In this document: piece by piece, positions 3,144 to 62,718 of the stretch
Position numbering within the stretch: position 1 is the first letter of the stretch
How the letters are laid out: each line of letters starts with the position of its first letter
Assembly (NCBI GenBank): GCA_964188305.1
Contig: OZ076890.1
DNA from: Podarcis bocagei
Taxonomy: Eukaryota
Reading direction: 5' to 3' (one strand)
Length of the DNA: 64,000 nucleotides
Program-made: the position numbers and the translations under genes
The notes under the pieces: model-generated
Told to the model about the DNA's origin: nothing
Databases searched by the model: none
What the model saw: the letters and a program-made list of their open reading frames with translations, nothing else

Positions 3144-3355
3144 NNNNNNNNNNNNNNNNNNNNNNNNNNNNNNNNNNNNNNNNNNNNNNNNNNNNNNNNN
3201 NNNNNNNNNNNNNNNNNNNNNNNNNNNNNNNNNNNNNNNNNNNNNNNNNNNNNNNNNNNNNNNNNNNNNNNNNNNNNNNNNNNNNNNNNNNNNNNNNNNN
3301 NNNNNNNNNNNNNNNNNNNNNNNNNNNNNNNNNNNNNNNNNNNNNNNNNNNNNNN
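3144..3355. other. Assembly gap (212 N)
   Basis: Run of N. Confidence 1.
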
Positions 3356-3582
3356 GTAAACAGCATGGTGCAAAAATGATAAAGGTAACATGCTACAAGG
3401 GGGATGGAACTAAAAACCAACACAAGTTTAGGCTTGCAATATAGAAGGTCTTCAAAGAGAGTTAGGCAAATATATAGCAGTAGCCAAGCTTCTGCAAAAC
3501 ACAGCAGAATCACAGCAATGCTGCATGTTTCTTTTTTAAAAAATACTATGTAAGCAACTACTGAGATAAAATAGTCACTTAC

Positions 3583-3774
3583 ATTGCTGGCTCGGGTCCA
3601 TATCTGTTGTCAGTTTCACATAGTTGGATGGGAAGAGACCCACTTGCCCATTCACTTCTCCTTTCCACCAGTCTGGGTCTTCCTTATTAAGGACGTTAAT
3701 GATCTGGCCTTTGCTGAATGCTAATTCATCATCATTCTGTGCAATGTAGTCATACATACCAATTACTTGGCACA
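3583..3774 (-). CDS. ITSN1: ITSN1 exon 29 (SH3E), ends CAG CAA T|
   Basis: 192 nt, cag/gtaagt. Confidence 0.97.
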
Positions 3775-6700
3775 CTGTTAAGACAATAAACAACATTTGA
3801 AACTGATAATATCCATGTCTACATATTTTTGAAATAGTATGTTAGTGCTCCTAAAACATCTCCCCACTTAAGTCACTATTTTGTTACTACATAGAAGAAG
3901 AAGAGGAGGAGGAGTTTGGATTTGATATTCCACTTTATCACTACCCTAAGGAGTCTCAAAGTGGCTAACAATCTCCTTTTCCCTTCCTTCCCCACAAGAA
4001 ACACTCTGTGAGGTGAGTGAGGCTGAGAGACTTCAGAGAAGTGTGACTAGCCCAAGGTCACCCAGCAGCTGCATGTGGAGGATCAGGGAATCGAACCCAG
4101 TTCACCAGATTACGAGTCCACCACTCTTAACCACTACACCACACTGGCTCTGTGCTTTAAAAGAGGAAGCTAAGCTATCAGGTCACCAATTAAAAAGTCA
4201 ATTCCACCTCTCAGCTCACGAAAGGGGGTATAAGTGTACCCACTGACTTCACTCTAGCATGTCTCAGTTCTAAACTATGACAATCTCACCTAATTGCTAT
4301 TTTACTAGAGGCCAAAAATAGGGATATTGTTAACTCAAGTATTTTTGAAATGCTTAGCGAAATTGGGGAAATGTGGTGATGAATACACCATCCAGAAGAT
4401 CACCATAAAGAGAAATAATGTATTACAATGTGACTAACACAGCAACTTTAAATGACCATACTGAGCAGGCTGACTTCACCAGTCAAAGAATACAACAGAG
4501 TGTGGGAATATTTCAACATGTAGAAATTCCAGAGGAAATCATCATCAAACTGGATCAATACATTAAGATACTATCAGGGGTAAACATTCAAATTGATGGT
4601 TTCCATAGAGTGCTATGATAAAGGGGCTTGTATTCCATGTAGCATTAAGTAAGCATCCCGCTTGCACAATGATTTCCACTTGCACAATAGGACTTTCCCC
4701 TCCTCCACCCTTAAACCTTTCCTTTTTCCAACCCTCTGAAGCAGATTTGGGGGGAGAGTGCTGTACACACAGTGTAGGACAGGGTGGGATGTCCTGTTGC
4801 ATAAACATAAATCCTTTCACTGATAGGACAAAGGAGCTGGATACCACCCATAGTCTACAGCAGGGGTTGTCAACCTGGTTCCTGCTGCCCACTAGTGAGT
4901 GTTTCAAGATTATAGGTGTGCGGTAGGGGGTTCTACGGAACAAGCTGACTCCTCCTTCCATTGAGCACTGGTGGGTGGTAAGGAAATTTTACCATCAAGA
5001 AAGATGCATTAGTGGTCGGTAGGTATAAAAAGGTTGACTACCCCTGGTCTACAGAATGCTATCAAACAAAGTCTATATATATCTATGTACTTTAAAAATC
5101 ACTCTGCTTTGTTTATATGTTCTCTTGACTTAAAGAAGATTCTGACCTATACTCCTGTTTTAGATGTGAGTTGTGATAATGAATCTAACAATTCTTCAAC
5201 AGCATGCAAATGATGGTGTTAGATCGGTAGATAAGATACATTCTACATCTGCACCAAAATTACCATCATATGTACATTTATTTTTAATCACTAATTATTA
5301 TATTGAAAAACCATCTTACTCCCACTGTTGCACCTATCATTCTTTATGAAGAATTACAACTGGATATGAAGCCCAAATTTATTACAGAAACTATTTCCAT
5401 TTGGATGGATATTTCTCTCTCATCTTTCAACTAGCTTGGCTGAAAACAACACACAATAGTAGATTGTAAGCCATATGAACTTCTGTCCCCTGCAATGAAT
5501 AGTATATTTATTTAGGGTATTTATGTATCACCCATCACAATACACAGGGCAGTTTCCAACATGACTTAAACAAAATAATTATAAAATATACAATAAATCC
5601 ATTAAAATTAATAGATATTAGATAATGCACAAATTAAAATAGCGATTAAAACAGTGAGGTAACTCCCAGTGTAATAAAATAAAATACAGCACCATTTTAA
5701 AAGTACAAACTTTTATAAAGCTAGCACCAGGCAAGTAGGTGTTAGGAAGGAGATGTAGGACATTATTTCATCACCATCATCAATTTAAGTGATTTTCAAT
5801 CTATGTTTGATGGACTGATAAAAGAGTTTAGAAGCTTATAAAGGGCTCCTTAATGAGAAAAGTCAAGCATGGTGGACAAGCTTAACTGAAAGACAGCTTG
5901 GCTACAACTACCTATTTCAATCTGCAATGTAAGGCTGCAGGGGAGCATTAGGTATATTCTAGGGTACACTCTCCGGTCACACAGTGAGATAATGAGTCCC
6001 CAAAGCCTGTCCAGCACTCTTCTGCATTACCCTGGGGGTTTCACAGCTGAGATTCATGCAACCGTTAAATTTATACGAAAAAGGTCCTCTGAACATAGAA
6101 AGTTTGGAAACCTCCTGATCTAAAGCATAGGCAATAACAGGTAATCAAATGCTACAGTATTACTTACCTGAAGGTAACACTACTGCTTTAGATGGCTCGG
6201 TTGGTGTAGTTTTACTAGTACCAGGACTTAAGAGTTTCACATAGTTAGCAGGAAACCATCCTATCTGTCGTTTTTTCCCACGAGCCTAGTAAGAAAACAA
6301 TAGCTTAGCATTTTGACTATCAAAATTATCTTGGCGGGAGCAGCTCTGTCTGAATTCTGTATTTGAAATACAAAAAAACCAGTCACTCAACAGTGCAGTG
6401 CTCTGAACTTGTTCAAAGTTTAGAGTTTGGATCCAGGATGAACAGAAGCAATGTGCAGTGTTCAATGCCTCCCTGAAGCCCTCAATACATCACATAAGAA
6501 CAGCCTAATGGATCAGGTGAATGGCTCGTCTAGTACAGCATCCTGTTCTCACAGTGGCCAGGTAAATGCCTATGGGAAAGTTGTAAGAAGCAGAGGAGCA
6601 CTCTCCCATCTTGCAATTTCCAGCAACTGGTATTCAGGAGCATATAGCCTCCAACTGTGGAGATGGAGCATGCTGTTCTGGAGTGCCTACTGACCCACAG

Positions 6701-8386
6701 AAACAGCTTATTGGATGTGAAAGAGGCAGACTAGAAAGGGTGAGTCAGGAAAATGCCATTGCACAAATGGAACTCCACCCAGAGTTGTTTGGATCTAAGT
6801 TTATGGGTGGAATTCAACTTTGGAATTCATTTCAGGCAAGCAGAAATGAACTGACAGAACCATCTCCCCACAGAGCCAATTGCCGGGGGGACAAAGGGGG
6901 GAAACCATGTTGCACTAGCAGGAAACCATTAGTGCAACTGTTTAGTTGACTTTGGCCTTAGGCCTTTGAAAATAGTATATCAGATTATCAATACTGTACC
7001 CTAAAGTATGGCCCTCCTAATAAAGTTGACCTGATTTTCCATTAGTCATGGCTGTAAATGTAATGACATCTGTTGCTGTGTGGTAATTGGTTAAGTAGAT
7101 ATAGTTGCCTCATCAATACACTTCCTTTACTGCATTGCAAAAAGTGAATTACAGATCTGACAGTTTTGACATTATCAAGAAAAAATTTGCCAAGGACCTC
7201 TAGCCCCTAGTATGGACCATAGATTTCAAAAGCAACTCTTAATAGTTGAGGCAACAACTATCCATTTTGTCCCGTTTTGACTCTCATTATCATCCAGGAA
7301 GAAATAATTCTTAAATCATCACTCTCTTTACCGGTATAGCTCCTTTTAAACAGGAGGTTTTTATATACTTCCATTCTTTCTAAGTTTTAATGCCATTAAA
7401 CGTGTATGTGCAAAGCCTAATTAAGCAAAGGTATAAATACACAGCAACAGGCAAGCATGATTGCCATGGCCACAGCACCATAATCTCTTCAGTTTGAAGA
7501 GCGCTACTATCATTGCCTGTGATCTTTTCTTCAAGGGTTTAATTCATATAGAGTGAACTGCTGTGCCACCCTATTTAATAGTCTACCGTATTTTTCGCTC
7601 TATAACACGCACCTGACCATAACACGCACATCGTTTTTAGAGGAGGAAAACAAGGGAAAAAATATTCTGAATGAAACAGTGGACGTATCATTTTTGTGCT
7701 TCATGCTGTGGCCACAGACATGTGATCTGATGGTGAATTTGGGGTGACCCAATGCAAAAATCCTGAGAATCCCTGTGGATCCATGCTTTGTAACCACGTT
7801 TTTGCACCATTGCAGCCCCAGGCAACAGTGGGTGCGTGATTTTTTGGGGGGGGGCAGGCTGTAGCCATGGACATGCTATGTGCTCTGATGGTGAATTTTG
7901 GCTGACACAATGCAAAGATCCTGAGGATCCATGTGGATCCATGCTCTGTAACCACGTTTTTGCACCATTGCAGCCCCAGGCAACAGTGGGTGCGTGATTT
8001 TTTTTTTGAGGGGGACAGGCTGTAGCCATGGACATGCTATGTGCTCTGATGGTGAATTTTGGCTGACCCAATGCAAAGATCCTGAGGATCCATGTGGATC
8101 CATGCTTTGTAACCACGTTTTTGCACCATTGCAGCCCCAGGCAACAATGGGTGTGTGATTTTGGGGGGGCAGGCTGTAGCCATGGACATGCTGTGTGCTC
8201 TGATGGTGAATTTGGGGTGACCCAATGCAAAGATCCTGAGGATCCATGTGGATCCATGCTTTGTAACCACATTTTAAGTGGGGAGGGAAGGAAAAACACA
8301 GAAGGCTAAGAATGCAGGAGAGGGCTATAACGTGAGGAAAGGAAGGCAAAAGTTTCCCCCCACCCACCCACACAAGCCAGCCAGCG

Positions 8387-8429
<43 letters not shown>

Positions 8430-11400
8430 CCCCCCTCTCCCTCCCACCAGCATGACAGAAGAAAGCATTTTAACTGCATTAAGAACTATTTAGCAGCGAA
8501 ACCTAAGCTTTGCCATCCCTTAAGAGGTACAGACACTGTAATCTTCCAGATCGCATGAATTTACAGGCAAAACACTGTTTAAGGATTTCATCCTTTTAAA
8601 TGGAAGAAAGCATATTTGAATGCTGTGTGTCTCCAAAAACAAAAAGCAGGAAGTCAAACCTGTAATCTCTCTTCCCTTCACAAACATTGTTCCCTCCGGA
8701 GCAGGGAGAGGATAGAAGGAAGGACGCTCCTTTCCTTTCCTCTCTGCTTGCCTGGAGGGGAGGGGCTTTCCCTGCTCTTTGTTCCGTTTGAGCAAACACA
8801 GTAACGAAACAGAGAGGGTGGGCAGTAAGACCCTGAGGCAGAATGCAGGAAAGCCACAGCTTCCTCTCTCACGGAGCTCCCTTCTCCCTGAAGCGCGGTT
8901 TGATTTTTGCCTCATTTGTGCGCTGCATAACACGCACAGACATTTCCCCTTCCTTTTTAGGAGAAAAAATCTGCGTGTTATAGAGCGAAAAATACGGTAA
9001 ATGGGGCAGCATAGCAGTTCACTCCACACCAAGTTAAAAACTACATGCTATTTTTCTCATGAGTGATGGAATTGTTACCCCAAACCTAAAAAGGAAAAGA
9101 AGTGCCAGGAAGCTGTTGATGAAAAAAATGATTGGTTTGAAAAGATATCACTTTCATTTCAGGTTTAAAAAGAAATAAATAACAGCACCAGATAAATCTT
9201 TCATTTTATGTCTACAGTTTTTGTAGCTTTCATTCTCTTTATACGTAAGTAAAAGGTAAGAGCCAAAAATAGTCACTAACTTGAAGCTCTCCTTCCCACC
9301 ATCCACCAGGATTTTTCTTCCTGATAAGTATTAGCTGACCAGGAGCAAGCGTAAGCTGTTCAGGACCTGTTGCTATGTACGAAGCAATAACTTGAGCAAT
9401 TTCTGTTAATTCAAAAAGAAATTATTTTCATTAATCTGAAAATCACTTCCATTGTATTGTGTCTCCAATTGTTATAGTGTGGTTCTTGCCATTTCATCTA
9501 CAGATTGCAAATAAAGACACTTTTCAATATAGCTATCAGGGAGTTGCTGTTTTTTAAACAGCAAAATTAGACCACACCAGAAACAATTGAATGATATGAT
9601 GCAATGTAATCAGAACATTCTATTACACTAATTCAATTTATGCTTCCTCTTAAGCAAATCACTTGAAGGTCAGTTGTAATAGGAGCTGCAACAATGCAGT
9701 GCTGAGCTAAATGTAATGTCAGTCCTCAACACTGTGTTCTAGAAAGAAAGTCATGTGTCTCAAAGCTAATTATCAATTAGAGGAGAAAGAGTCAGGCACC
9801 CCATCTTACAAAATCTTCACATTTATATTTCATGCAGAAGTGCCTGTAAGTCATGCCACTGGTATGATATTAAAAAGCTGTAGGGCAAATGCACTTATTC
9901 TTTAAAATCCTTTGTATAGTTATATCTGTACAAAGAATTATTTTGCAAAAGTTAATTTTGTTTCTCAGAGCACGGCTTACCAGGTTTCTTGCCTAAGCTT
10001 CCTGTTTTTCCAGCTGTTCCAGGCACCTTTAAATAATAGAACAAACATAACTCACACTTCCATAGAGAACATTGCAAGCTGATTTGGAAATAGAGAAGTT
10101 TTCAAAACTGTAATATTGTAAGGTAAGATATTCTGCTGCTGAAAGTAAGTGGCAAAAGTCTCACAGGGTTCATGTAAGCCCTTGGGTAAACTACAAGTCC
10201 TTATTCCTGGGCTAAGTACAGAGCAAGGAAAATTGATGGTTAAACTTCATATATGGGAGCCCTTTTCTATTATTCCTATCTTAAATTACAACATCAGAGT
10301 TAGAGCTATGTATACGCTGATGAAGGAAAACAGAACCTGCGTTCTGGCAATCCGAACTGGGCACCAAGAAAGTTTGCAGACACGAGGGCAAATCTGCTTA
10401 ATTTAATTTGCATAATTTCATCTGGGTTCTTTTCACTTCGACTTTCAACAACAGCAATCGCACAAACAAATGACACAGCTACTATATTACATGCAGATAT
10501 AACATGTAAAAACACAAGCAATTTTACAGGATTGTCACACATTACAGTCTACATGAATGTGTAGGCAATTTGTAAATGTGTCAAGTCATATTCAGTAATT
10601 CTTAAAGTCAAACATAATACCACCTTGTGTTATACTGAAATCTAAATCCATTCTACTTTCAACTCTGCTTTATAAAATTAGCCCTCCACATGTGGCCCAC
10701 TAATTCTTTGTTTTTTAATAAAATGCATGCATATGTGTGCATTTTACCTCAGAGTCTTTGAGTCTAACATAGTTAGATGGAAATACTCCTGATTTATCGC
10801 CCAATGTTCCTGTCCACCAGTCTCCATCCTTCTTGGTCACAAGAATTAAATCCCCTTGCTGAAATGTTAAATCTCCTTGTTCAGAACTTTCGTAAGTGTA
10901 CATGGCAACATATTCTGGAGGGAGGAAATTTTTAGAAATGAGAAAGTACTCGTCAATCATGAGATATTGTTTTATGGGAAAGAGTGGTGTCCTAATGTCC
11001 AATAGAAAAAGGGTAATGTAATACAGGATACATTCTGCTCTCAAGTGCAGTGGTACCTTGGGTTAAGAACTTAATTCGTTCCGGAGGTCCGTTCTTAACC
11101 TGAAACTGTTCTTAACCTGAGGTACCATTTAGCTAATAGGGTCTCCTGTTGCCGCCGCACCGCCAGAGCACAATTTCTGTTCTCATCCTGAAGCAAAGTT
11201 CTTAACCCGAGGTACTATTTCTGGGTTAGAGTCTGTAACCTGAAGCATCTGTAACCTGAAGCGTCTGTAACCCAAGGTACCACTGTATTGAAATCCACCA
11301 GCTATTTCTGTTCTCACAAAATGACTTCAAGCCAGTGCAAGATGAAAACAAGACCTGAGGCTCATGAAGGCTCATAACAATGAATAATAGTTTGCCATAA

Positions 11401-14400: not shown

Positions 14401-17400
14401 TCTTGTTTATCACTAGTACTTGCTGGCCAGCTGAAAAAGAAAGGTATGACGGGTTTGAACTGAAGATACACACAAATCTGTTCCTCTTATTTCTTGACTA
14501 TTGCATGCTCTTCAAATTAATGCTTATTCCTGCTGCAGATTCTATTATCCTAAATCTCCCTCATCTACAAAATATTCACTACTGCTGTGGCAATCTTTAC
14601 CCAAACCTGAGAACTCAGAAAGAGATATTGATATTCACCAGCACATTTTTGCGGCAATCAGGTATTAGCTGGGCGCTGGTGCTTCTTCTTCAGACACTTA
14701 GGAACCAGCAATGAAAGGCTCCCAGGCAACTATGATCATATTTTGTCTCACTGCCTTTGAAGTTACATGAACGGTTTGTTTGTTTTTAAAGAAACCATTT
14801 TATTTCTTTGGGTTTTTTAAAGTTTGTAGTATGAGAAAAGCAAGGTTTTTCCTGACAAACAAGCTTGTTTGATGTATAGGTCTTGGCTACAATGTGTAAT
14901 AATATAATGTTACTCAAATTATATATACATAAAAATTGCTACCACAGAAATGAAGCAGAATCTTAAACTGGTTCTGTGAGATGACTGGTGCTCCAGAACC
15001 TTGGAATTTTAAGAGAGAGAATTCTTCCTGCCACAAATAGGTGGATCTGAATTCCATCCTGATGTACTCTTACATGCACAGGAGAAAATATTTTCAATAA
15101 AGCAATTCATTACCTGTGGCAGGCTAGTAATAATTTTGTTAGTATGAACTTTTGTAAGTGTATTTGCTATGATGCTGAATTAACTTCATAATGCTACCAA
15201 TATGCCATAAACAACTAAGATATTATAGGTGGCTCAAATGTTTTGCAGACTTAACTGCAAGACTACTTTAAACCATGTGGATTATTCACCTTTACAGTTA
15301 TAAAGGAGAAAGAAAGGAAAATTGAACCCCAATGAAACCGTACGTTGAACTGAAGTCTGCCCAGTTGTTGGCAGTTGTACTTGAATCTGTAGGAACAGGC
15401 GGTGCCAGTGGTGTTGTGGGGGTTTCACGCAATGAAACTTTAGGTGCAGCTCCAGCATCAGTTACCGGCTTTACAGAATTTGTAATTTCATTTTCAGAAA
15501 TTCTCTCTGCATAGTTTGCAGGAAACCATCCTGTTTTCCCTTTCAGTTCACCTCCAAGCCACCCAGGCTCTCCAGTTTGGCTTTCATCCACCTGTACAAA
15601 TGAACCATATATTATATAAGATACAATACACAATTAATAAATTTTCTCCAAAAAGCATGGCACCTGAAAGTTAAGGAACAGTGTTATTGCTGCATGTACT
15701 AACTATTCCATGACGTTACAGCTACTTAAAAACAACAACCCCAAAGTACATTTGTAGTGATTATGGCTTTGATAAAATCCAAATGTGAAATTAAAGCAGA
15801 TATTTTGCAAAAACTGCTGTTGTCTCAAAATAACCAGTTGCAATAAATCGATTACAGACTGCAAAATTTTTGCAGCAATGTAATCTAAATCTTTCTAGAT
15901 TTCCCAAAGGGTAGGAGACACAGTGAGTTGGAACAACTGTAATTGTACTGATATCTATAGATTGATTTTTTTAATGTTTTATGTTGTAAGCCAACTTCAT
16001 ATATTTTATGAAACTGCAGATCATAAGTACTTAAAAATGCTTCAATGAAGGTAGGAAAACACAAAGAGGTTCATTCTGGGACAGTCACATCCCTCCCTCA
16101 GTTTGATTTCCTGCCTTTGACAACAAGGTGGAGCAATAGCTCATGCTGAAGACCTTTATGATCATTGGGGAAGCCTGCATTATGGGCTGCGCTACTAAGA
16201 CTGTGGGCAGGAAGGAACCTGCTCTGGAATAAATCTCTCCCCAGTTTGGGGACGAATGAGCCTTCAGATCCAAGCCCTTTTCCCTCCCCAACACACTCCC
16301 TTTTTGGCCCTACTAATGGAGCACCAACTTCATTCAGGCTAGGGCGGTGACAGTGTTCCATTTCCATTGTCAGTTCTATTTCCTCTAGGCTAAGTACACT
16401 ACTTTAAGACACCACTCCATCTTAATTTGACCTTTCAGCCTCTAGGACGTTACACTTTCACAACATGTTATCTATCATTAGGATAGATACAACATGTGTG
16501 TTTTTGTGTAACACTATATTCTTCTCTTACCATGATTATGTCTCCTGGCTGGATAGTGATTTCATCATGACTTCGGGATTCAAATGGATAAAGTGCTCGA
16601 TAATAGACTATTTTTACATCTTCCGGAGCAGAAATTGTTAATGGAGCCTTTTCTATACACACAAAAGCAAAAGCATAACAAGGTTTATTATATAGAAAAA
16701 AGGGCATTTTGCTTGCACAAATGCTACACTATTTTTCATTATACTCCTGCTGAACAGAATGTTATCTTCATTTTACAAAGGAGAAACAAAGGAAAGTCAA
16801 TCACATTTGAATTTAAAAACATTTGAAACTAAGTCAGAATCTAATCTGTATGTGATTTTTTTTTACTCTGCTGCATCTAAAGAATTGAGGATGCATTGCA
16901 ACAAACTCATAACTGAAGTGTAATAGCCCTTACGGCATATATACTAAAGGCCTTTGTAAATTGCACACCCATGCATACAATAAAAAGTATATTCATAGGA
17001 TACATAAAATCTATCAAAAATATAATGCCTGTTTTGGGAAAACATGTTCAAAGCATTATTAAAGATAAAGTTAACTAAGCATAAAGAGAAAGCTAACCTC
17101 TGGAACACCAAGCACTCCCACTCTTTACTTACACTAGGAGGGAGGGAGTGTGTGGCTGCCATCATTGATGCTGAGGGGAGCACTATAAAAGGGGTATAAA
17201 TTTATCACTCGTGTGGAGAAAGTCATGAGACAAGTCTCTCTCTTTTTCATAATGCTATAACCATGGCTATTCCACAACCCCAAGGTGTGGGGGATTCAGG
17301 ACAGACAAAAGGAAGTACTTCTACACAGAACACTGCTGAACTATGGATTTTGCTCCAACAAGATGGAGTAATGGCCACCAACCTGGATGGCTTTAAAAGA

Positions 17401-46224: not shown

Positions 46225-47335
46225 CTGTTCCTTAGCAAGATGACTTGTTACACTGTGTCATGATTTATTTAACAAAAACAAAGCCAAAATGAAGAAGCCA
46301 TGTGTGAAAATCTAAGTATACGGTTACTGCTTCCATAGAAATTAAGAGGATAAGTAGTAGACTGGTGCTGGTAATCAAATGCCCTTGCTTAATTGATCAT
46401 CAGCAAGTGTGCCCACCTCTATAAAATCCAAAGTTTTAGCAGTTTGCTGGTCTGGAGCATTCAGGTGTGTTTTAACACAACGCTAAGGACGAAAGACATC
46501 AGCAATGCTGCCCATACAACTGGGAAGGTTTATAAGGCCATCACCACCAATTTTAAGTCAATCACTTTAGAGTGAGAAAGATTATTCAAAAGTGAAAAAG
46601 ATTCAAGACAGTTGTCAATTTTCCCAGGAGTGGACGTCCCAGCAAATTCACCCCAAGGTCAAGCTCTGCAACGGTCAAAGAAATTGCAAAAAGCCCAAGA
46701 GTTACATCTCAGGCTGTACAGGACTCAGTTGGCATGTTAAATGTTAAAGTTCAAGACAGTAAAATTAGAAAAAGACAGAACAAATATGGTTGTTTGAAAG
46801 GGTTGCCAGGAGAAACCCTCTTCTCTCTAAAAAGAACATGGCAGCATGGTTTAGGTTTGCAAAGTTGCATCTTAACAACCATAAGACTTCTAGAACAATG
46901 TCCTTTGGACAGACAAGACCAAAGTGGAGATGTTTGGACATAATGCACAGAACTACATTTGGCAAAAACCAAACATAGCATATCAGCACAAACACCTCAT
47001 ACCAACTAGCAAGCATGGTGGTGGAGGGGTGATAATTTGGGCTTGTTTTGCAGCCACAGGACCTGGGAACCTTGCAGTCATTGAGTTGACCATGAATTCT
47101 TGTGTATATCAAAGTATACTACAGTCAAATGTGAGGCCATCTGCCTGACAGCTGAAGCTTGATTGAAATTGGGTTGTGCAACAGGACAACAATCCCAAGT
47201 ACACCAACAAATCTACAACAGAATGGCTGGGGGTGGGGGGAGAATCAAGGTATTGCAATGGCCCAGTCAAAGTCCAGACATCAACCAAATCGAAATGCTG
47301 TGACAGGACCTTCAGAGAGTTGTGCATAAATGTCA
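46225..47335 (+). pseudogene. Tc1-family transposase fossil
   Basis: KHGGGGVIIWACFAATGPG, QQDNNPKY, WPSQSPD motifs; frameshifts and stops; no TIR pair seen. Confidence 0.9.
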
Positions 47336-48819
47336 CACCCAAGGAACACAGAGACATAAATCACAAACTAGACAACTCTGTATGTAGTTCACAAAAACAG
47401 TTAATAATGTAGAGCATTTCCATACTGTCTATTACATGAAATCTTAAATAATACATACAGTGCCAAAATAACAACATGCACAACTCAGTATCTCAAAGCC
47501 AAACAGTTCTGAAATAAGTCCATGAGAGCAACACTCTTTGTGTATATGTGTGCTGGTGTGATCCCAACTGAACTCCGAGACACATGGATTTCAATCCATT
47601 TCGTGAATCTTCTTCTGGTCAGACCAAGGAGGAGCTATACAATGGCAGTTCAATGCTCCACCAAATAGATCAGCTCCCACCTTAGAATGGCACTCATATA
47701 CAAGATGGCCACATCAGACTCACTCTCCCAGGCACCACACAAAGTGGTGGCAGTGAGTGAACTTGGGGCTTCTCCTTGCAGCTACAATAAAATGAAGGCT
47801 CAGATGCAGCCTGGGCAAGTCAGAGGCTTCCGTGCCGCCGCCGCCCCAGAGAAGAACACAGGAAGGACTCAGGAAAGTGTCCTCCTCCTCCCATAGCCTG
47901 CAGGCAATGCACACACACACACACTGACAAAGCTGCTAATCCTGCGCCCTCCCTCTTTTTCCTTGCATGGCAGCTTGGGGACAGACGCAGGAAAGAGAGA
48001 AAGCAAGAGTGCAGAACAGGGGAGGAGCCCCACTGGCAGGAAAGACGCTTCCCTCACCAAAGCAGCTGCCAGAAGGTAAGCATTGGTGGTGATGGTGCTC
48101 CTGCGGGGGAGACCTCTTCATCTGGATGACAGGCACCCTGGTAGGTGGGTGGGCAAGGAAGCATCAAGCAGGTAACTCGCCTCCACCACCCAAACTTTGC
48201 ATCAGGCTATGTCCCTCCCTCATACACTGCCCCCTCCCCTTGCCTGTGCCCCCACTTCCATCTTTTAAGTACCAGCACTTTTCCCCCCTAGAAAAGAAGC
48301 ACTAGGAAATCCATACTGACATTCCAAGCTGTGTAAAAATCAGTGATACTTTTTTTTTTTTTTGCAACTCTGAAACCTAACTCTGGCACCATATTGAGTA
48401 ACGACAGCAGATAAAAGAGGAATTCTCAATTGCTACACTATATTAAGAAAATTTGGCAGTTTTACCACAGTCAAAACTGAGATTTTTAAAAAGCAATGCA
48501 CTTTTAAATAGTGAACACACTTGTGGGACCAAAAAGATTATCTCACTTCTGCAGATGATTCAAGGTTGAGGCATGAGTAAATATTAGCAGAAGGGTGAGT
48601 AATAAATTATGAAAGATTGTATACCATGTTCACTGCACAACTAGCTGTAATCCAGACTTCCTGGATTAGACACAGTACAAGAATCAAGGTGTAAATAGAA
48701 ATTAAATTTGTTGCCAAGTAACACTAGCAGCCTCAGTGTTTAAGAGTGCATTTTAGCAGGTATGGCTGCTGCTCCAACCATTTTTGGCCAAAGCAATTCT
48801 TACATTGGTAACCTCAAGG

Positions 48820-56845: not shown

Positions 56846-58068
56846 TACTCCTTTCTATACCAATACTGTATATTAACCTGTTTTGTGAAAAATGTTCAAT
56901 GAAAAAATGCTGTTATCAATGCTCTGTTGACAGCTTATTTAAAGTACTTCAATGTATTGTTCAAGGAGCTGCTTTTGAGAACCACTTTGGAACTATATGC
57001 AAAATACAGGAACAGGTTTCCTAACTGAATTAGGTGCATGGAACTTCCAATTCTCAGACAGCCAGACACCAGCTCTCAGTCTTTTCATGGGACAATGTCA
57101 AGTGTTGGTTTTAACCTTTGAAGTACTAAACAACTTGGGAACAGAGAATCTAAAGAATCTCCTCCTCCTACAATTGATCTGGCTTGGCATTAGGTTACTG
57201 GTCCTAGTCATTAGAAGGTAGGTGGTGACCAAATTTAGTGTCCCCTCAATCAAGGCACTCTGCCTCTTAATTCCCTCTCTGAAGAACTTGGCCAGTCACT
57301 ATTCCTGCATTCTTTTTGATGCTATATAATCTGTTTGGGCCTTTTAGATCTTTTAAATGTATTTTATGGTATGAATGAATCTTACTCTACTGTATGTTAC
57401 AGCTATTTTAATATAATTTTATATTTGCTTTAACTTCCTGTAAGCCACCCAAGCTTTAGCAGTACAGCAGCTATATAAATTCTGAAATCTTGCCAAGTAT
57501 CCTGTACCACTCTTGCAAATAGGCTTTCCTAATGTTTGGTCTATGTTTTACTATTTCCACCTATTTAGTTCAAAAATATTTTTCATGCCATCAGTATCAA
57601 AGATAGAAAATGGAGAATTTAATTTTTCTGTCATTTTCTCTCATTTTTCCCATCACTAAGCTACCACAGTCATTTCTTAACCAACGAACATGCCTTCTTG
57701 TTTGCCTTGTTTTTCAGAATCCATTGTTATTATATTTAACTTTCCAATATCTATTTTCCCCTCAATATTTTCTACAAAGTATATACTAAGAATATAAGGG
57801 TTAAACCAACTATTAAGAGCCCTTATCAAAAAAAATTTCCTGGAGGGCTACGTTGAGATGTGTGGGAGGGATGTTAATTTACTAACACATTAAGCAAACT
57901 CCCAGCAAGTTCTGTACATATTTCTCTTTTATCATTGCTGGGATGTGTAAATTGGGAAGCTAGGTAGTACCTCTCAACAGCCAGCCTCTAGACTAGAGCA
58001 TACTGTGATTCTGCTATTCACTCTGATATAGCTTTTAACATTTTGCAACACACTATTGTTTATAAGTA

Positions 58069-58281
58069 CAGTGGTACCTCAAGTTACAAACACCTCGGGT
58101 TACAAACTCCGCTAACCTGGAAGAGTTACCTCGAGTTGAGAACTCTGCCCCAGGATGAGAACAGAAATCATGTGCTGACGGCACAGCAGAAGCAAGAAGC
58201 CCCACGCCTCTAGTTAAGAACAGTTTCAGGTTAAGAACGAACCTCCAGAACGAATTAAGTTCATAACTAGAGGTACCACTG
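58069..58281. mobile_element. Tigger/pogo-like MITE, family A (opposite orientation)
   Basis: TIR CAGTGGTACCTC.AGTTA, TA TSDs; interior is reverse complement of the 11048 copy. Confidence 0.88.
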
Positions 58282-59782
58282 TATTTAATTTGGGATGCTC
58301 TATAAATCCCAGATCTTTGATTAGAGTATTAATATCCAACTAATTATCCATTTGGACTTCAGCATCATACTGACATCTTAAATCCTGCCAAAGGAGCTCA
58401 CAGTTTCATAAGAGATCTAAGAATTTAACTATTTCCTTGGTCTTAGCCTCAAGCATAATAAACTGAACTGGATATACAGTATTTGTCTTTAACAAGCAGC
58501 CCAAAAACTGTTTGTGAAGGATGGCTATGAGCAAGAAGTCACTATGTCACATTTTCATGGCTGTTTCATTACTGAACACTTACTCCAGCTGGGAATGCCT
58601 ACAAGATGAAATTATTTTATATAGTATTACTGGTAAGCAGTTTGTTCTCAGTAGTCAATTTCCTATGAGGAAAACACATCCAAGATGAAGACTGCCTATA
58701 GGTACAAATGTAATCAAATAAATGTTGCTGTTAAACTCAGACGTGATAAAGACCTTGCTTCTTCCAAGGCTAAATGCCAATCTTTGAAGTGGAGGACATG
58801 TTTCCTTCATTACAGGGCTATGAAGGCCAAAAAAGGTGCATGGGCCAGAAAGTGCAAGGCCAAAACTCATGCAAAAATCCAGACACTTTTTTTTTAGTCG
58901 GAAAATGTCACTAACGGAGATTCCTCTTTGGAAACCATGGCTGCCCACGCGCAGCAATCTCAGCCAGGGACCATACTGTATAAGTTACTTCTGCATGCTC
59001 CACCTCGGATTCTCGTTGCATCTCTTCGCACCGACAGTCTACCGGCGAGTTTGTTAAAACAGACACGAGCGAGAGCGTGTTTGTTAAAACAGGCACGACA
59101 AAGACGTCGGCTGCTTTTGCAGGCAAGGCAATCTCGTTTGCCCGAGCCGGGCATAAATAAGCTCTCTCTTCCCCACCCCCCACAAGGAGGGCCCGCTCAT
59201 CACCCCGCACACTTATTCCCTTCTGCTTGCTATATTATATATATATATTCCCCTAAGAAATAAGAGTCAAAAAGATCGGAGCAGGAGACGAAATCAAAGG
59301 CGCCGCTATCGGCGCCAGAAGACCAGCATTAGGAGAGATTTTTTTAAAAGGAATCACGGCGAAGAGCTCCCGGCACACACTCCGGGTCAATGGCCACGGA
59401 TCGCCCTCCTCTCGGGCGGGAGGCGCCTGGGAGGAGAGAGGGGCGCCGGGCAATGGAGGGGGGTGGGCCAGGCAATGGGATGGACTGAGGGAGAGAAGAA
59501 CGGGGACAAAAATCATACGGGGGGGGGGGGGAACGGGCCGCCAACCAGGAATAACATTGGGAATAACAACAGGGCAGGCGGCGGGGGCGAATGCGGGGCC
59601 CCCGAACAAGGGCGAGAGGGCCGCGCGCGTGCGCTGGGGCTGGTGGAGGGGTCCCTCCCCGCCTCGCTCTCCCCAGCGCGCCTGCGCTCCCCTCACCAGG
59701 GTGACCCCCCGGGCTCGCCCTGCCCGTTGCCGAGCCCCTTGGCCCACGGGTCCCCTCCGCCGCCGCCGCCTCACGCCGCTAC

Positions 59783-60070
59783 CTCATCTCTGTCGGGTCT
59801 CGGGTGTCCTCTTCACCCCCACAGCAAGGACGGAGGGACGGCAGGAGCAGCAGCAGCCGGCGCAGCAGCGGTGGCAGCGGCAAAGGCCACCGCCTCCCCG
59901 AGACGCACCATCCCCGCCCGCGTCTGCTCTTGCTCTAACCGCCGCCGCCGCCTCAGAGTCCCCGCCGCTGTCTCGGGCGGAGTGGGGTGGGGGAGGCGCG
60001 TGTGGGCGGAGAGAGGGAAAGAGAGAGGAGCGACCTGCCCGGCTCTCCCTCTCTCGCACACCCGCCGCCT
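59783..60070 (-). other. ITSN1: ITSN1 non-coding exon 1 (5' end approximate)
   Basis: In CpG island; ends ...GAGATGAG|gtagcg, matching my recollection of the mammalian exon 1 end. Confidence 0.7.
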
Positions 60071-60529
60071 GACTGCGCAACCCGAAGAGAGGCGCAAATC
60101 CCGAGGCAGCCAACCAAGCCCTCGCCCAGCCCGCAGATCCCACCCCTCTCCCGATGACGGACGCGCCCAGCCACCATTAGGAGAGGGGAGCATTCCGCCG
60201 AGTTGGTCGCCGAAAGCGCGCTCTGGGAAAGAGGAGATAAGCCCAAGGGCGCGAGGTGAGGGGAGAGCCGAGGAGGGCACGCAAGTTTCGCACGGGCCGA
60301 TAGAAATTGTGTGAAGGAAGGGGAACCGAGCGAGGCTGGACGTGACGAGAAAGAAGCACGCCTGGTGTTTCGAAAGTCATGCTTATTGAAAGGAGACCGC
60401 GGCGAAGCTGACTTGCCTCCCATCCTTATTCTGCCTCTCACACGCCGAGTACGGCTTTTTATTGCCCACTCAGTAATTGGAGAGGCGCTGCATGCTGGGA
60501 CCAATGAGGCAACCCGTGCTGCAAAGCTT

Positions 60530-60544
60530 GCTGGGAATTGTAGT
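60530..60544 (-). promoter_or_regulatory. ZNF143/THAP11-type motif ACTACAATTCCCAGC
   Basis: Matches ACTACAnnTCCCA consensus; nearby CCAAT boxes at 60476-60480 (-), 60501-60505 (+) and 60658-60665. Confidence 0.8.
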
Positions 60545-60639
60545 TTTAGCAGGCCAGGAACTCCCGTCGATAAGCTATTAGAGCGCGCCGCTCCGGAGCG
60601 CTCCCCTCGTTTTTCCCTCGGTCACCCGCCCCCCGTATA

Positions 60640-60754
60640 GAGTGGCAGCCGTTTTTGCCAATTGGGATCTGCGTTTCTGCGCTGCTCCGTTCTAAGGCTT
60701 TCCAAGCTAGGATTCGCGCTCCCGCGAGAATCAGAGAGAGGGGCCTAAGAAGAG
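60640..60754 (+). other. CRYZL1: Probable CRYZL1 non-coding exon 1 (5' end approximate)
   Basis: GAG|gtaatg donor at the distal side of the CpG island. Confidence 0.5.
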
Positions 60755-62718
60755 GTAATGGGTTTGTCATGACAACCACCCGGGTCTCTTCTGCGGGGCA
60801 AGGGGCTGGGCGCGCGAGGCAGAGGCAGCGAGCAGAGCAGCGCTGATCTTTGTGGCGCCTTCAGCCCTCGGGACCTGCAGCCGCCCTTCTTTGACCTCCC
60901 GTAGCTGTTCAGCATCCGCACTTATTTCCAGTCTTGCTAAAGAAGGGCGAGGTTCCTGAGCTCGGGAGGTTCCCTGCAGCTATTGCTCATCTCATATCCT
61001 TCCCTTTAGCTGGTGGTGGGAAATCAAGATCTTGCAATTTTGCATTTAAGAGACCCAGTAAAGTACTGGCACTGTGGTAGGGGCATCTGCTTATTTTGTT
61101 TACGCACCGGTTTATTTCGAGAACGTTATACCCTTCTCTTCAGAATAGAGCTGAAGCATAGACTAAAATGCAGTAATAGGATAAAATAATTTTAAAAGTG
61201 GAGTTTCCAAAACATGCCAGCGATTGCTAAAGCAAAACACAATGCACCAGCAACGCTTCACTTAGAGAGGCACACTTAATTGGAAAGTGAGTCCCATTGA
61301 ATGGAACTCAGCTGAACCTTTGAATAAATGTGCTTTGAGTAGTATTGTGTAAAATGTCTAAAAGGCTGGCACAAATTGAAAGGACTTCACCTGGTGCTGA
61401 AAAGGCATTAAGCCCAGTGTCTGGCAAATATGCAAAAAACAAGACCCTACAACTGAAAAGCCTTGTTTGGCTCACAGCCCACTTCCCATTTGAGGTTAGG
61501 GGAATCCAGAGGAGTGGCTCCACAGGTAGATCTTATTGACCAATAAAATCCAGATGGGCCTGCTTAGAATAAAATAGGATATCTGCAGAAATTTCCAGCT
61601 GAGACCTAGAAATATCCTTTCATGCACAACAAATTTGCCTTTTCACTTATTCAGAATTCTTGTGCTTTTATAGGGTACATTGGATAAGTAACAGAGAAGT
61701 GCTTAAGAGTGAGAGGGAAGCTGAGAAGTTACAGGATTGAGGATGAATGAAATGCACAAGAAACAGTAAAGGTTTCAGACAAATAATCCTTACTAAGTGG
61801 GCCATCTTAACCTAATAGTTCAGATTTACAAATTATATTAGGTGCTGTGTGTGACAATGTATACACCACCTTCCATTTCCTTGTGTATATATGCATATTT
61901 TGGATAATTAGTAATCCCATCACAAGCTGCTCCTATCTGTAGTACCATACCATACCATCACTTCATTTTTTTCTGCATCCGTTTGTCTGCAGAGAGTTGT
62001 GGTTTTGCTTTGGACGAACTATGCTTATACAGATGGTTGGCTAGACTTGGGCATTGAATCGTACAAACTGAGCACACCTTAGAATATACTCAGTGCTCTT
62101 CAGGATTTGTGCTTTTAAGAAAAAAAACAGTTATGGTAGGTACTAGCCAAGCTAAAAATACTTCTGGGTAAAGGTTGTTCATTCCATTGGAATAAATGGT
62201 GATCGTAAAAATAAAAAGTTTTGAGTTTGTGGTAAAATTCTACAGAAATGTTTTACAATTAATTTTCAATTTCTTGTAGTGCAGTCCTATATATTTTTTC
62301 TAAGACGTAAGTCCCATTGGGTACAATGAGACTTTCTCCTTGGTAAGTGAGTGTAATAATGCAACCTGAATCAACTTAGTGTTGTTCCCATTTTTCAGAT
62401 GAGTGAAATGAAACAGATGGTGATTTATCCCTAAAGCTAGTAAATGAATTTCTTTCTTAGATTTCCCAGAACTAAACCCAGCGTGCTGTGATGTAATAAA
62501 CTACTCCATGGTTAAGAAGTCAATGTATATTCATGAAGTATCTTTGAATTAGGGAAGGAAATTAAAAGAAACAGGTAAATGTTTTTCAAACTGTGATCGG
62601 AAGAACCTTTGAGTTACCGGTACTTAGAAGTTTATCAGGGTTCATTGATAATTGCTGATCAAGACTTGCATTACTAAAGCAGGCTTTTCCAATAAGAAAA
62701 ATGTTGCTTGTATTGCTC

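What the first reader, a model, noticed from the sequence alone, without database searches (positions are those of the whole stretch)
15592..16530. Neural VKGEW microexon of SH3A appears to be missing
Known: vertebrate ITSN1 has a conserved 15-nt neuron-specific exon 20 (VKGEW-like) between ...GDIVM and VDESQ that alters SH3A partner binding. Seen: this intron is only 939 nt, has no gap, and by eye contains no AG-15nt-GT segment ending in TGG. Inference: lineage-specific loss of a conserved neural microexon, or a mis-assembly.
Basis: partly seen in the sequence, partly recalled or inferred. Interest (0 to 1): 0.7.

Follow-up and report, generated by a model that had tools for sequence, protein, structure and literature searches.

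The report
Lizard ITSN1 lacks neural SH3A microexon
This lizard's intersectin-1 gene has no trace of a 15-base, brain-specific mini-exon that gene models and DNA show in hagfish, sharks, bony fish, turtles, birds and mammals, and its closest sampled relatives lack it too, so it is most likely an old evolutionary loss, not an assembly error; use in RNA could not be tested.

Summary
The window carries ITSN1 on the minus strand. The SH3A domain is split by a gap-free, 939-nt, phase-0 GT..AG intron (16530..15592). It has six AG-15nt-GT segments; none ends in TGG or resembles V-K-G/R-E-W.

The same scan finds the microexon at once in controls: two bird contigs (VKREW) and two fish contigs (VKGEW), one with an intron of only 869 nt. 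Public gene models carry the insert in hagfish, elephant shark, teleosts, birds, sea turtles, marsupials and eutherians.

Two independent short-read contigs from the window's closest sampled relatives hold the whole orthologous intron (2169 and 2339 nt). They also lack it. The three introns share only weakly homologous ends and no conserved inner island, so a hidden diverged microexon is unlikely.

Best reading: an ancient deletion in the lizard (probably squamate or lepidosaur) lineage removed exon 20, leaving only the ubiquitous SH3A form.

Limits:
- The relatives' species are unlabelled.
- No labelled squamate gene model was reached.
- No paper reporting this loss was found.
- The scan's earlier notes did not hold this finding.

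The parts
16531..16652 (-). ITSN1 exon 19 equivalent (N-terminal half of SH3A, ends …QPGDIIM on a complete codon).
   Evidence: Direct reading and translation. Orthologous exons in L001, L004 and L007 end the same way before GTAAGA.
15592..16530 (-). The intron that should hold microexon 20: 939 nt, phase 0, GT..AG, no gap, no VK(G/R)EW-like cassette and no relic of one.
   Evidence: No repeat copy elsewhere in the window. No Rfam family reaching threshold.
15344..15591 (-). ITSN1 exon 21 equivalent (C-terminal half of SH3A plus the start of the INTAP linker, [11 protein letters not shown]…).
   Evidence: PDB 6h5t Intersectin-1 at E 1.6e-26, against ITSN2 1uff at 8e-10. Pfam INTAP PF16617 at 63 bits against a cutoff of 25.
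16412..16426 (-). Chance look-alike 15-mer ATTAAGATGGAGTGG (I-K-M-E-W). It has no AG before it and no GT after it, and it is not conserved in relatives. It is not a microexon or a relic.
   Evidence: Best loose-pattern match. 24.5% of shuffles reach the same score. The aligned positions in L001 and L004 differ.
15607..15758 (-). About 150 nt at the 3' end of the intron that is weakly but collinearly conserved with the relatives' introns. It shows the introns are orthologous. Probably the branch-point and acceptor region.
   Evidence: WIN to L001: 122 nt, 65%, E 6e-9. WIN to L004: 153 nt, 61%, E 0.002. L001 to L004: E 1e-4. No such match to the bird intron.

Best explanation
The gene is the lizard orthologue of intersectin-1 (ITSN1). 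The ancestral 15-nt neural cassette exon (exon 20) inserts V-K-G/R-E-W into the n-Src loop of SH3A. It has been physically deleted from the intron between the two SH3A exons. The deletion happened in an ancestor shared with at least two other deeply diverged relatives, most likely within or at the base of squamates or lepidosaurs. It came after the split from turtles and birds, which keep the exon. As a result, splicing can only join exon 19 directly to exon 21 (phase 0 to phase 0). All tissues, neurons included, would then make the 'ubiquitous' SH3A form. The neuron-specific shift in SH3A partner preference described in mammals (more dynamin-1, synaptojanin-1 and CdGAP; less SOS1 and Cbl) would not be available through this route. 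Shown here: absence from the DNA here and in relatives, presence in outgroups, and orthology of the introns. Inferred: the timing, the single-isoform outcome in brain RNA, and any functional effect.
For: (1) Gene identity: the exon 21 translation matches PDB 6h5t ITSN1 SH3A. Pfam finds INTAP, SH3 and EH hits on the neighbouring exons.
(2) Absence: no AG-15-GT or AG-15-GC cassette shares 3 or more of 5 residues with VKGEW. There is no pattern hit in the intron. The best in-frame cassette of 3-51 nt scores below zero on simple splice-site matrices, while the real bird exon scores +2.2 with a +4.7 donor.
(3) Positive controls with the same script: bird L007 2342-2356 and L005 42-56 hold GTTAAAAGGGAATGG followed by gtaagt. 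Fish L011 6904-6918 and L012 3830-3844 encode VKGEW, in introns of 1466 and 869 nt. The pattern with donor is reached by 0 of 200 shuffles in the bird intron, but is at chance in WIN, L001 and L004.
(4) Relatives: L001 (intron 2169 nt) and L004 (2339 nt) have no N and canonical ends, and lack the exon. Exon 21 of these contigs is 84-85% identical to the window's by BLASTP, against 71-74% for the contigs that the tree places among birds. Their intron ends align collinearly with the window's, and the bird's do not.
(5) No conserved island is shared by the three lizard-type introns apart from their ends. This argues against a hidden diverged microexon.
(6) Antiquity: gene models carry the insert in Eptatretus (VKSDW), Callorhinchus, birds, Caretta and Natator (VKREW), and teleosts, marsupials and eutherians (VKGEW). 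The literature agrees.
Against: A cassette with no sequence likeness to the known one therefore cannot be formally excluded. The relatives' contigs carry only SRA run numbers, so 'squamate-wide' is an inference. The exon 21 protein tree places the window nearest to them but without supported clades. No labelled squamate ITSN1 gene model could be retrieved. Even in turtles most annotated isoforms are the skipped form, so gene models would be weak evidence anyway. Read-level support for the assembly across the intron was not obtained. The only hint is that DNA runs X15 and X16 hold 0.94 and 0.81 of the sampled words of the 4.3-kb stretch, and these may be the source sample.
Confidence: 0.8

Rival explanations
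1. A functional neural microexon still exists in this intron, but it has diverged beyond recognition (different peptide, weak or non-canonical splice sites).
For: Real microexons have weak acceptors. The true bird exon ranks only 8th on simple splice-site scores, so sequence-only scans are not sensitive. RNA was not examined.
Against: The peptide is nearly invariant from shark to mammals, and still V-K-x-D/E-W in hagfish. No in-frame cassette of 3-51 nt in the window's intron reaches the bird exon's score. The three lizard-type introns share no conserved inner block, whereas two bird contigs are 136/140 identical around theirs.
Confidence: 0.06
2. Assembly artefact: a stretch of the intron that holds the microexon was dropped or collapsed in this assembly.
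For: At 939 nt the intron is shorter than in the relatives (2169 and 2339 nt) and in the bird (6748 nt).
Against: There is no gap in the intron. Two independent short-read contigs of relatives lack the exon in complete introns. Both intron ends are collinear with the relatives'. A fish keeps the exon in an 869-nt intron, so shortness alone is no sign of error. DNA runs hold 0.81-0.94 of the sampled words of the stretch.
Confidence: 0.04
3. The loss is real but narrow or recurrent: confined to a few lizard lineages, or lost several times, and not a single old squamate or lepidosaur event.
For: The relatives are unlabelled. Intron lengths differ 2.5-fold. The exon 21 tree gives no supported clade.
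Against: Three lineages whose intron interiors no longer align (deep divergence) all lack it. A single ancestral deletion is the simpler account.
Confidence: 0.1

Closest known systems
Vertebrate ITSN1 microexon 20 (neuron-specific N-SH3A isoform; Tsyba 2008 and Dergai 2010 as cited in PMC3645719; zebrafish itsn1 microexon deletion in PMC12626424)
   Same: Same gene, same phase-0 junction (…GD-I/V-I/V-M | VDESQ…), same flanking exons. The window is the orthologous locus.
   Different: The cassette itself is missing here and in the closest sampled relatives. Everywhere else examined it is present as 15 nt encoding VKGEW, VKREW, VKSDW or VRKEW with a gtaagt donor.
SRC N1 microexon (also in the SH3 n-Src loop; treated together with ITSN1 by Dergai 2010)
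   Same: Same principle: a neural microexon inserts residues into the n-Src loop of an SH3 domain and retunes its ligand choice (quotes this for dynamin-1).
   Different: A different gene. It is not in this window and was not examined.
Experimental deletion of the itsn1 microexon in zebrafish (PMC12626424)
   Same: Gives the same outcome: ITSN1 is expressed but never with the insert.
   Different: An engineered allele in one fish species, with a reported change in neurite length. Here it would be a natural, fixed state of a whole reptile lineage with unknown consequences.

Membership tests
Intersectin-1 (ITSN1) orthologue | SH3A closer to ITSN1 than to ITSN2 | tested here: met
   Exon 21 translation: 6h5t Intersectin-1 at E 1.6e-26 and 95.9 bits; 1uff Intersectin-2 at E 8e-10 and 42.7 bits.
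Intersectin-1 (ITSN1) orthologue | INTAP linker after SH3A, two EH domains upstream and further SH3 domains downstream on the same strand | tested here: met
   Pfam INTAP at 63 bits. SH3_1 on exons at about 13.0, 10.9 and 3.7 kb. EH on exons at about 30.2 and 35.3 kb.
Neural SH3A microexon 20 of ITSN1 | A 15-nt AG…GT cassette lying between the two SH3A exons | tested here: not met
   Six AG-15-GT and four AG-15-GC segments exist, and none is a plausible exon.
Neural SH3A microexon 20 of ITSN1 | Encodes V-(K/R)-x-(D/E)-W | tested here: not met
   No candidate shares 3 or more of 5 residues. The best loose match, at 16426-16412, lacks splice sites and is at chance level.
Neural SH3A microexon 20 of ITSN1 | Strong gtaagt donor and a UGC-rich pyrimidine tract just upstream, as seen in the bird and fish controls | tested here: not met
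   The controls show these features. Nothing comparable is in the window's intron.
Neural SH3A microexon 20 of ITSN1 | Neuron-specific inclusion in mRNA | not testable with these tools

The most novel reading that the evidence does not exclude
All squamates (lizards and snakes), or all lepidosaurs, lost one of the most deeply conserved vertebrate neural microexons (hagfish to human) through a single ancestral intronic deletion. A whole order would then be a natural knockout of the ITSN1 N-SH3A isoform. This would imply that the isoform is dispensable, or that endocytic coupling in their neurons is compensated elsewhere.
Probability: 0.5. Interest if true: 0.55.

Novelty: new variant of a known kind. 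Interest (0 to 1): 0.45.

Why it matters
The ITSN1 SH3A microexon is a standard example of how a neural microexon retunes a protein interaction domain, and it has been used as a model 'conserved for 450 million years' exon. A clade that has fixed its loss gives a natural experiment. It can show how essential the isoform is, whether SH3A or its ligands changed to compensate, and how often core members of the SRRM3/4 microexon programme are lost. For annotation, it means that the missing ITSN1 isoform in lizard gene sets need not be treated as an error.

Tried and rejected
2. Relic search. I compared the bird exon with 150 nt of flank on each side to the lizard-type introns and found only 12-mers or shorter. 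The degenerate-pattern best hits are at chance level. An I-K-M-E-W look-alike at 16426-16412 was rejected.
3. Labelled squamate gene models.
 - The costly representative search gave only a hagfish ITSN1 (P0046) as a usable full-length entry.
 - A region search with it listed the top 120 of 1039 hits and no squamates. The list is cut by score, so this is not evidence.
 - A search with a turtle linker segment returned only turtles.
 - The turtle cluster lists turtles and crocodilians only.
4. Species labels for the SRA runs: no hits through the paper search or the scan's own notes.
5. The exon 21 protein tree was too short to resolve clades.
6. Transposon or RNA-family content of the intron: none found.
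7. Steps left out on purpose. I fetched no contigs for the mammal- or human-like hits P0009-P0011, P0019, P0023-P0025 and P0029, and I left them out of the tree.

Full report
**What is there.**
The window holds most of an intersectin-1 gene on the minus strand.
- There is a GC-rich stretch at about 58-62 kb.
- EH-domain exons lie near 35 and 30 kb, and SH3 exons at about 13.0, 10.9 and 3.7 kb.
- The SH3A domain is split in two. Exon 19 (16652..16531) ends on a complete codon with …GDIIM. Exon 21 (15591..15344) begins [11 protein letters not shown].
- The exon 21 translation matches the solved ITSN1 SH3A chain 6h5t (E 1.6e-26) far better than ITSN2. It also carries the INTAP linker.
- The intron between them is 939 nt, GT..AG, phase 0, with no N.

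**The observation.**
The intron has six AG-N15-GT and four AG-N15-GC segments. None ends in TGG, one holds a stop, and none shares three or more residues with VKGEW. A degenerate splice-flanked pattern allowing three mismatches hits nowhere in this intron. With simple splice-site matrices, every in-frame cassette of 3-51 nt scores below zero. The real bird exon scores +2.2, with a +4.7 donor.

**Is the exon really expected here?**
- Literature: the review PMC3645719 reports that Dergai et al. [quoted passage not shown] An eLife 2025 study treats it as conserved from zebrafish to human and reports a neurite-length change when it is deleted in zebrafish.
- Gene models: in the top 120 hits of a region search seeded with hagfish ITSN1 (P0046), the insert sits exactly at this junction. 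It reads VKSDW in Eptatretus. It reads VKREW in Callorhinchus, many birds, and the sea turtles Caretta and Natator. It reads VRKEW in Motacilla, and VKGEW in teleosts, marsupials and eutherians.
- The cassette is therefore ancestral to vertebrates, and both birds and turtles keep it.

**Positive controls in DNA.**
The exon 21 ORF found 38 genomic ORF fragments in public assemblies. I fetched their contigs and ran one and the same script on each.

| Contig | Type | Intron length | Microexon |
|---|---|---|---|
| L007 | bird (groups with labelled birds) | 6748 nt | 2342-2356, GTTAAAAGGGAATGG then gtaagt, UGC-rich tract upstream |
| L005 | bird | start not on contig | 42-56, about 4.8 kb upstream of exon 21 |
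| L011 | fish | 1466 nt | 6904-6918, VKGEW |
| L012 | fish | 869 nt | 3830-3844, VKGEW |

Sequence around the exon is 136/140 identical between the two bird contigs. A short intron is thus no reason for the exon to be missing, and the scan does find it across more than 400 million years of divergence.

**The relatives.**
P0001, P0002 and P0003 are the closest hits: 83-85% identical in exon 21, against 71-74% for the contigs that group with birds. They share the window's linker signature (…[13 protein letters not shown]…, with one or two substitutions in P0001 and P0002).
- Contigs L001 and L004 hold both SH3A exons and the whole intron (2169 and 2339 nt, no N, canonical ends). They have no VK(G/R)EW-like cassette.
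- L003 holds only 1254 nt upstream of exon 21, and nothing is there either.
- The intron interiors of the window, L001 and L004 do not align with one another. Their first and last 110-180 nt do align, collinearly (best E 6e-9). None aligns with the bird intron.
- These are therefore orthologous introns of deeply diverged members of one lineage that excludes birds.
- No inner island is conserved among them. A functional microexon would be expected to leave one.
- The best loose match in the window, ATTAAGATGGAGTGG at 16426-16412, has no splice sites, is matched by 24.5% of shuffles, and is not conserved in L001 or L004.

**Which animal.**
Earlier notes of this scan call the genome a wall lizard and report the DOCK7 neural microexon as present in it. 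I did not test either claim. DNA runs have about 1.3-1.6 billion letters of contigs, which fits a squamate-sized genome. The relatives' contigs carry only run numbers (SRR31946008/9, SRR13336339, SRR12196015), which I could not resolve.

**What could not be done.**
A cluster look-up showed only turtles, crocodilians and birds.
- Most turtle gene models are the skipped form although sea turtles have the exon. Missing gene models would therefore have been weak evidence in any case.
- I never joined exons into a spliced model for a search.
- I fetched no contigs for the human- or mammal-like hits.

**Reading.**
The simplest account is one ancestral deletion within this intron. It occurred after the lineage split from turtles and birds and before the window's species diverged from the L001 and L004 species. 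It removed exon 20 and its flanks. The lizard can then only make the ubiquitous SH3A form.
- Shown: the absence in DNA, the orthology of the introns, and the exon's presence in outgroups.
- Inferred: the extent across squamates, the single isoform in brain RNA, and any functional effect.
- I put 0.8 on a real evolutionary loss, about 0.06 on an unrecognisable surviving cassette, and about 0.04 on an assembly fault. About 0.1 goes to the loss being narrower or recurrent.

**Novelty.**
Four literature searches found no report of this loss. It is a new variant of a well-known locus, not a new kind of element. It is of moderate interest to people who study microexon evolution and intersectin biology.

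Noticed in passing
L005:42-56, L007:2342-2356; proteins P0199-P0301: The insert is VKREW in birds, sea turtles and elephant shark, VKGEW in teleosts and mammals, VKSDW in hagfish, and VRKEW in Motacilla. The third residue is the variable one, and Arg may be the ancestral jawed-vertebrate state.
   Followed up: partly
proteins P0040, P0193, P0245, P0261, P0298, P0328, P0331: Some public ITSN1 models carry odd inserts at the same junction (VRAES, VCSTYKNV, VRRGGKRS, VR, VKRER, VRR). Several begin with VR, as a read-through of the gtaaga donor would, so they look like annotation artefacts and not real isoforms.
   Followed up: no
window 7600-8400: Minus-strand ORFs here repeat the same peptide blocks several times (…[30 protein letters not shown]…). 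This suggests a tandem array of units of about 160 nt inside an ITSN1 intron, followed by a (GA)n-type simple repeat near 8330-8440.
   Followed up: no
window 46750-47420: ORF fragments with Tc1/mariner-transposase-like wording on both strands suggest a decayed DNA transposon in an upstream ITSN1 intron.
   Followed up: no
window 3144-3355: The only N run of the window (212 N). It lies just downstream of the last SH3 exon seen in the window (about 3578-3796).
   Followed up: no
window 58000-62000: GC content rises to 0.50-0.52 against about 0.38 elsewhere. This is the likely CpG-island promoter and first exon of ITSN1.
   Followed up: no
window 16455-16475; L001 about 745-765; L004 about 505-520: A small block about 60 nt into the intron (…ATGTTGTGAAAGT…) is the best conserved piece of the 5' intron end among the three lizard-type introns. 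In L001 it contains TGCATG, an Rbfox-type motif. In the window it reads ACATG.
   Followed up: partly
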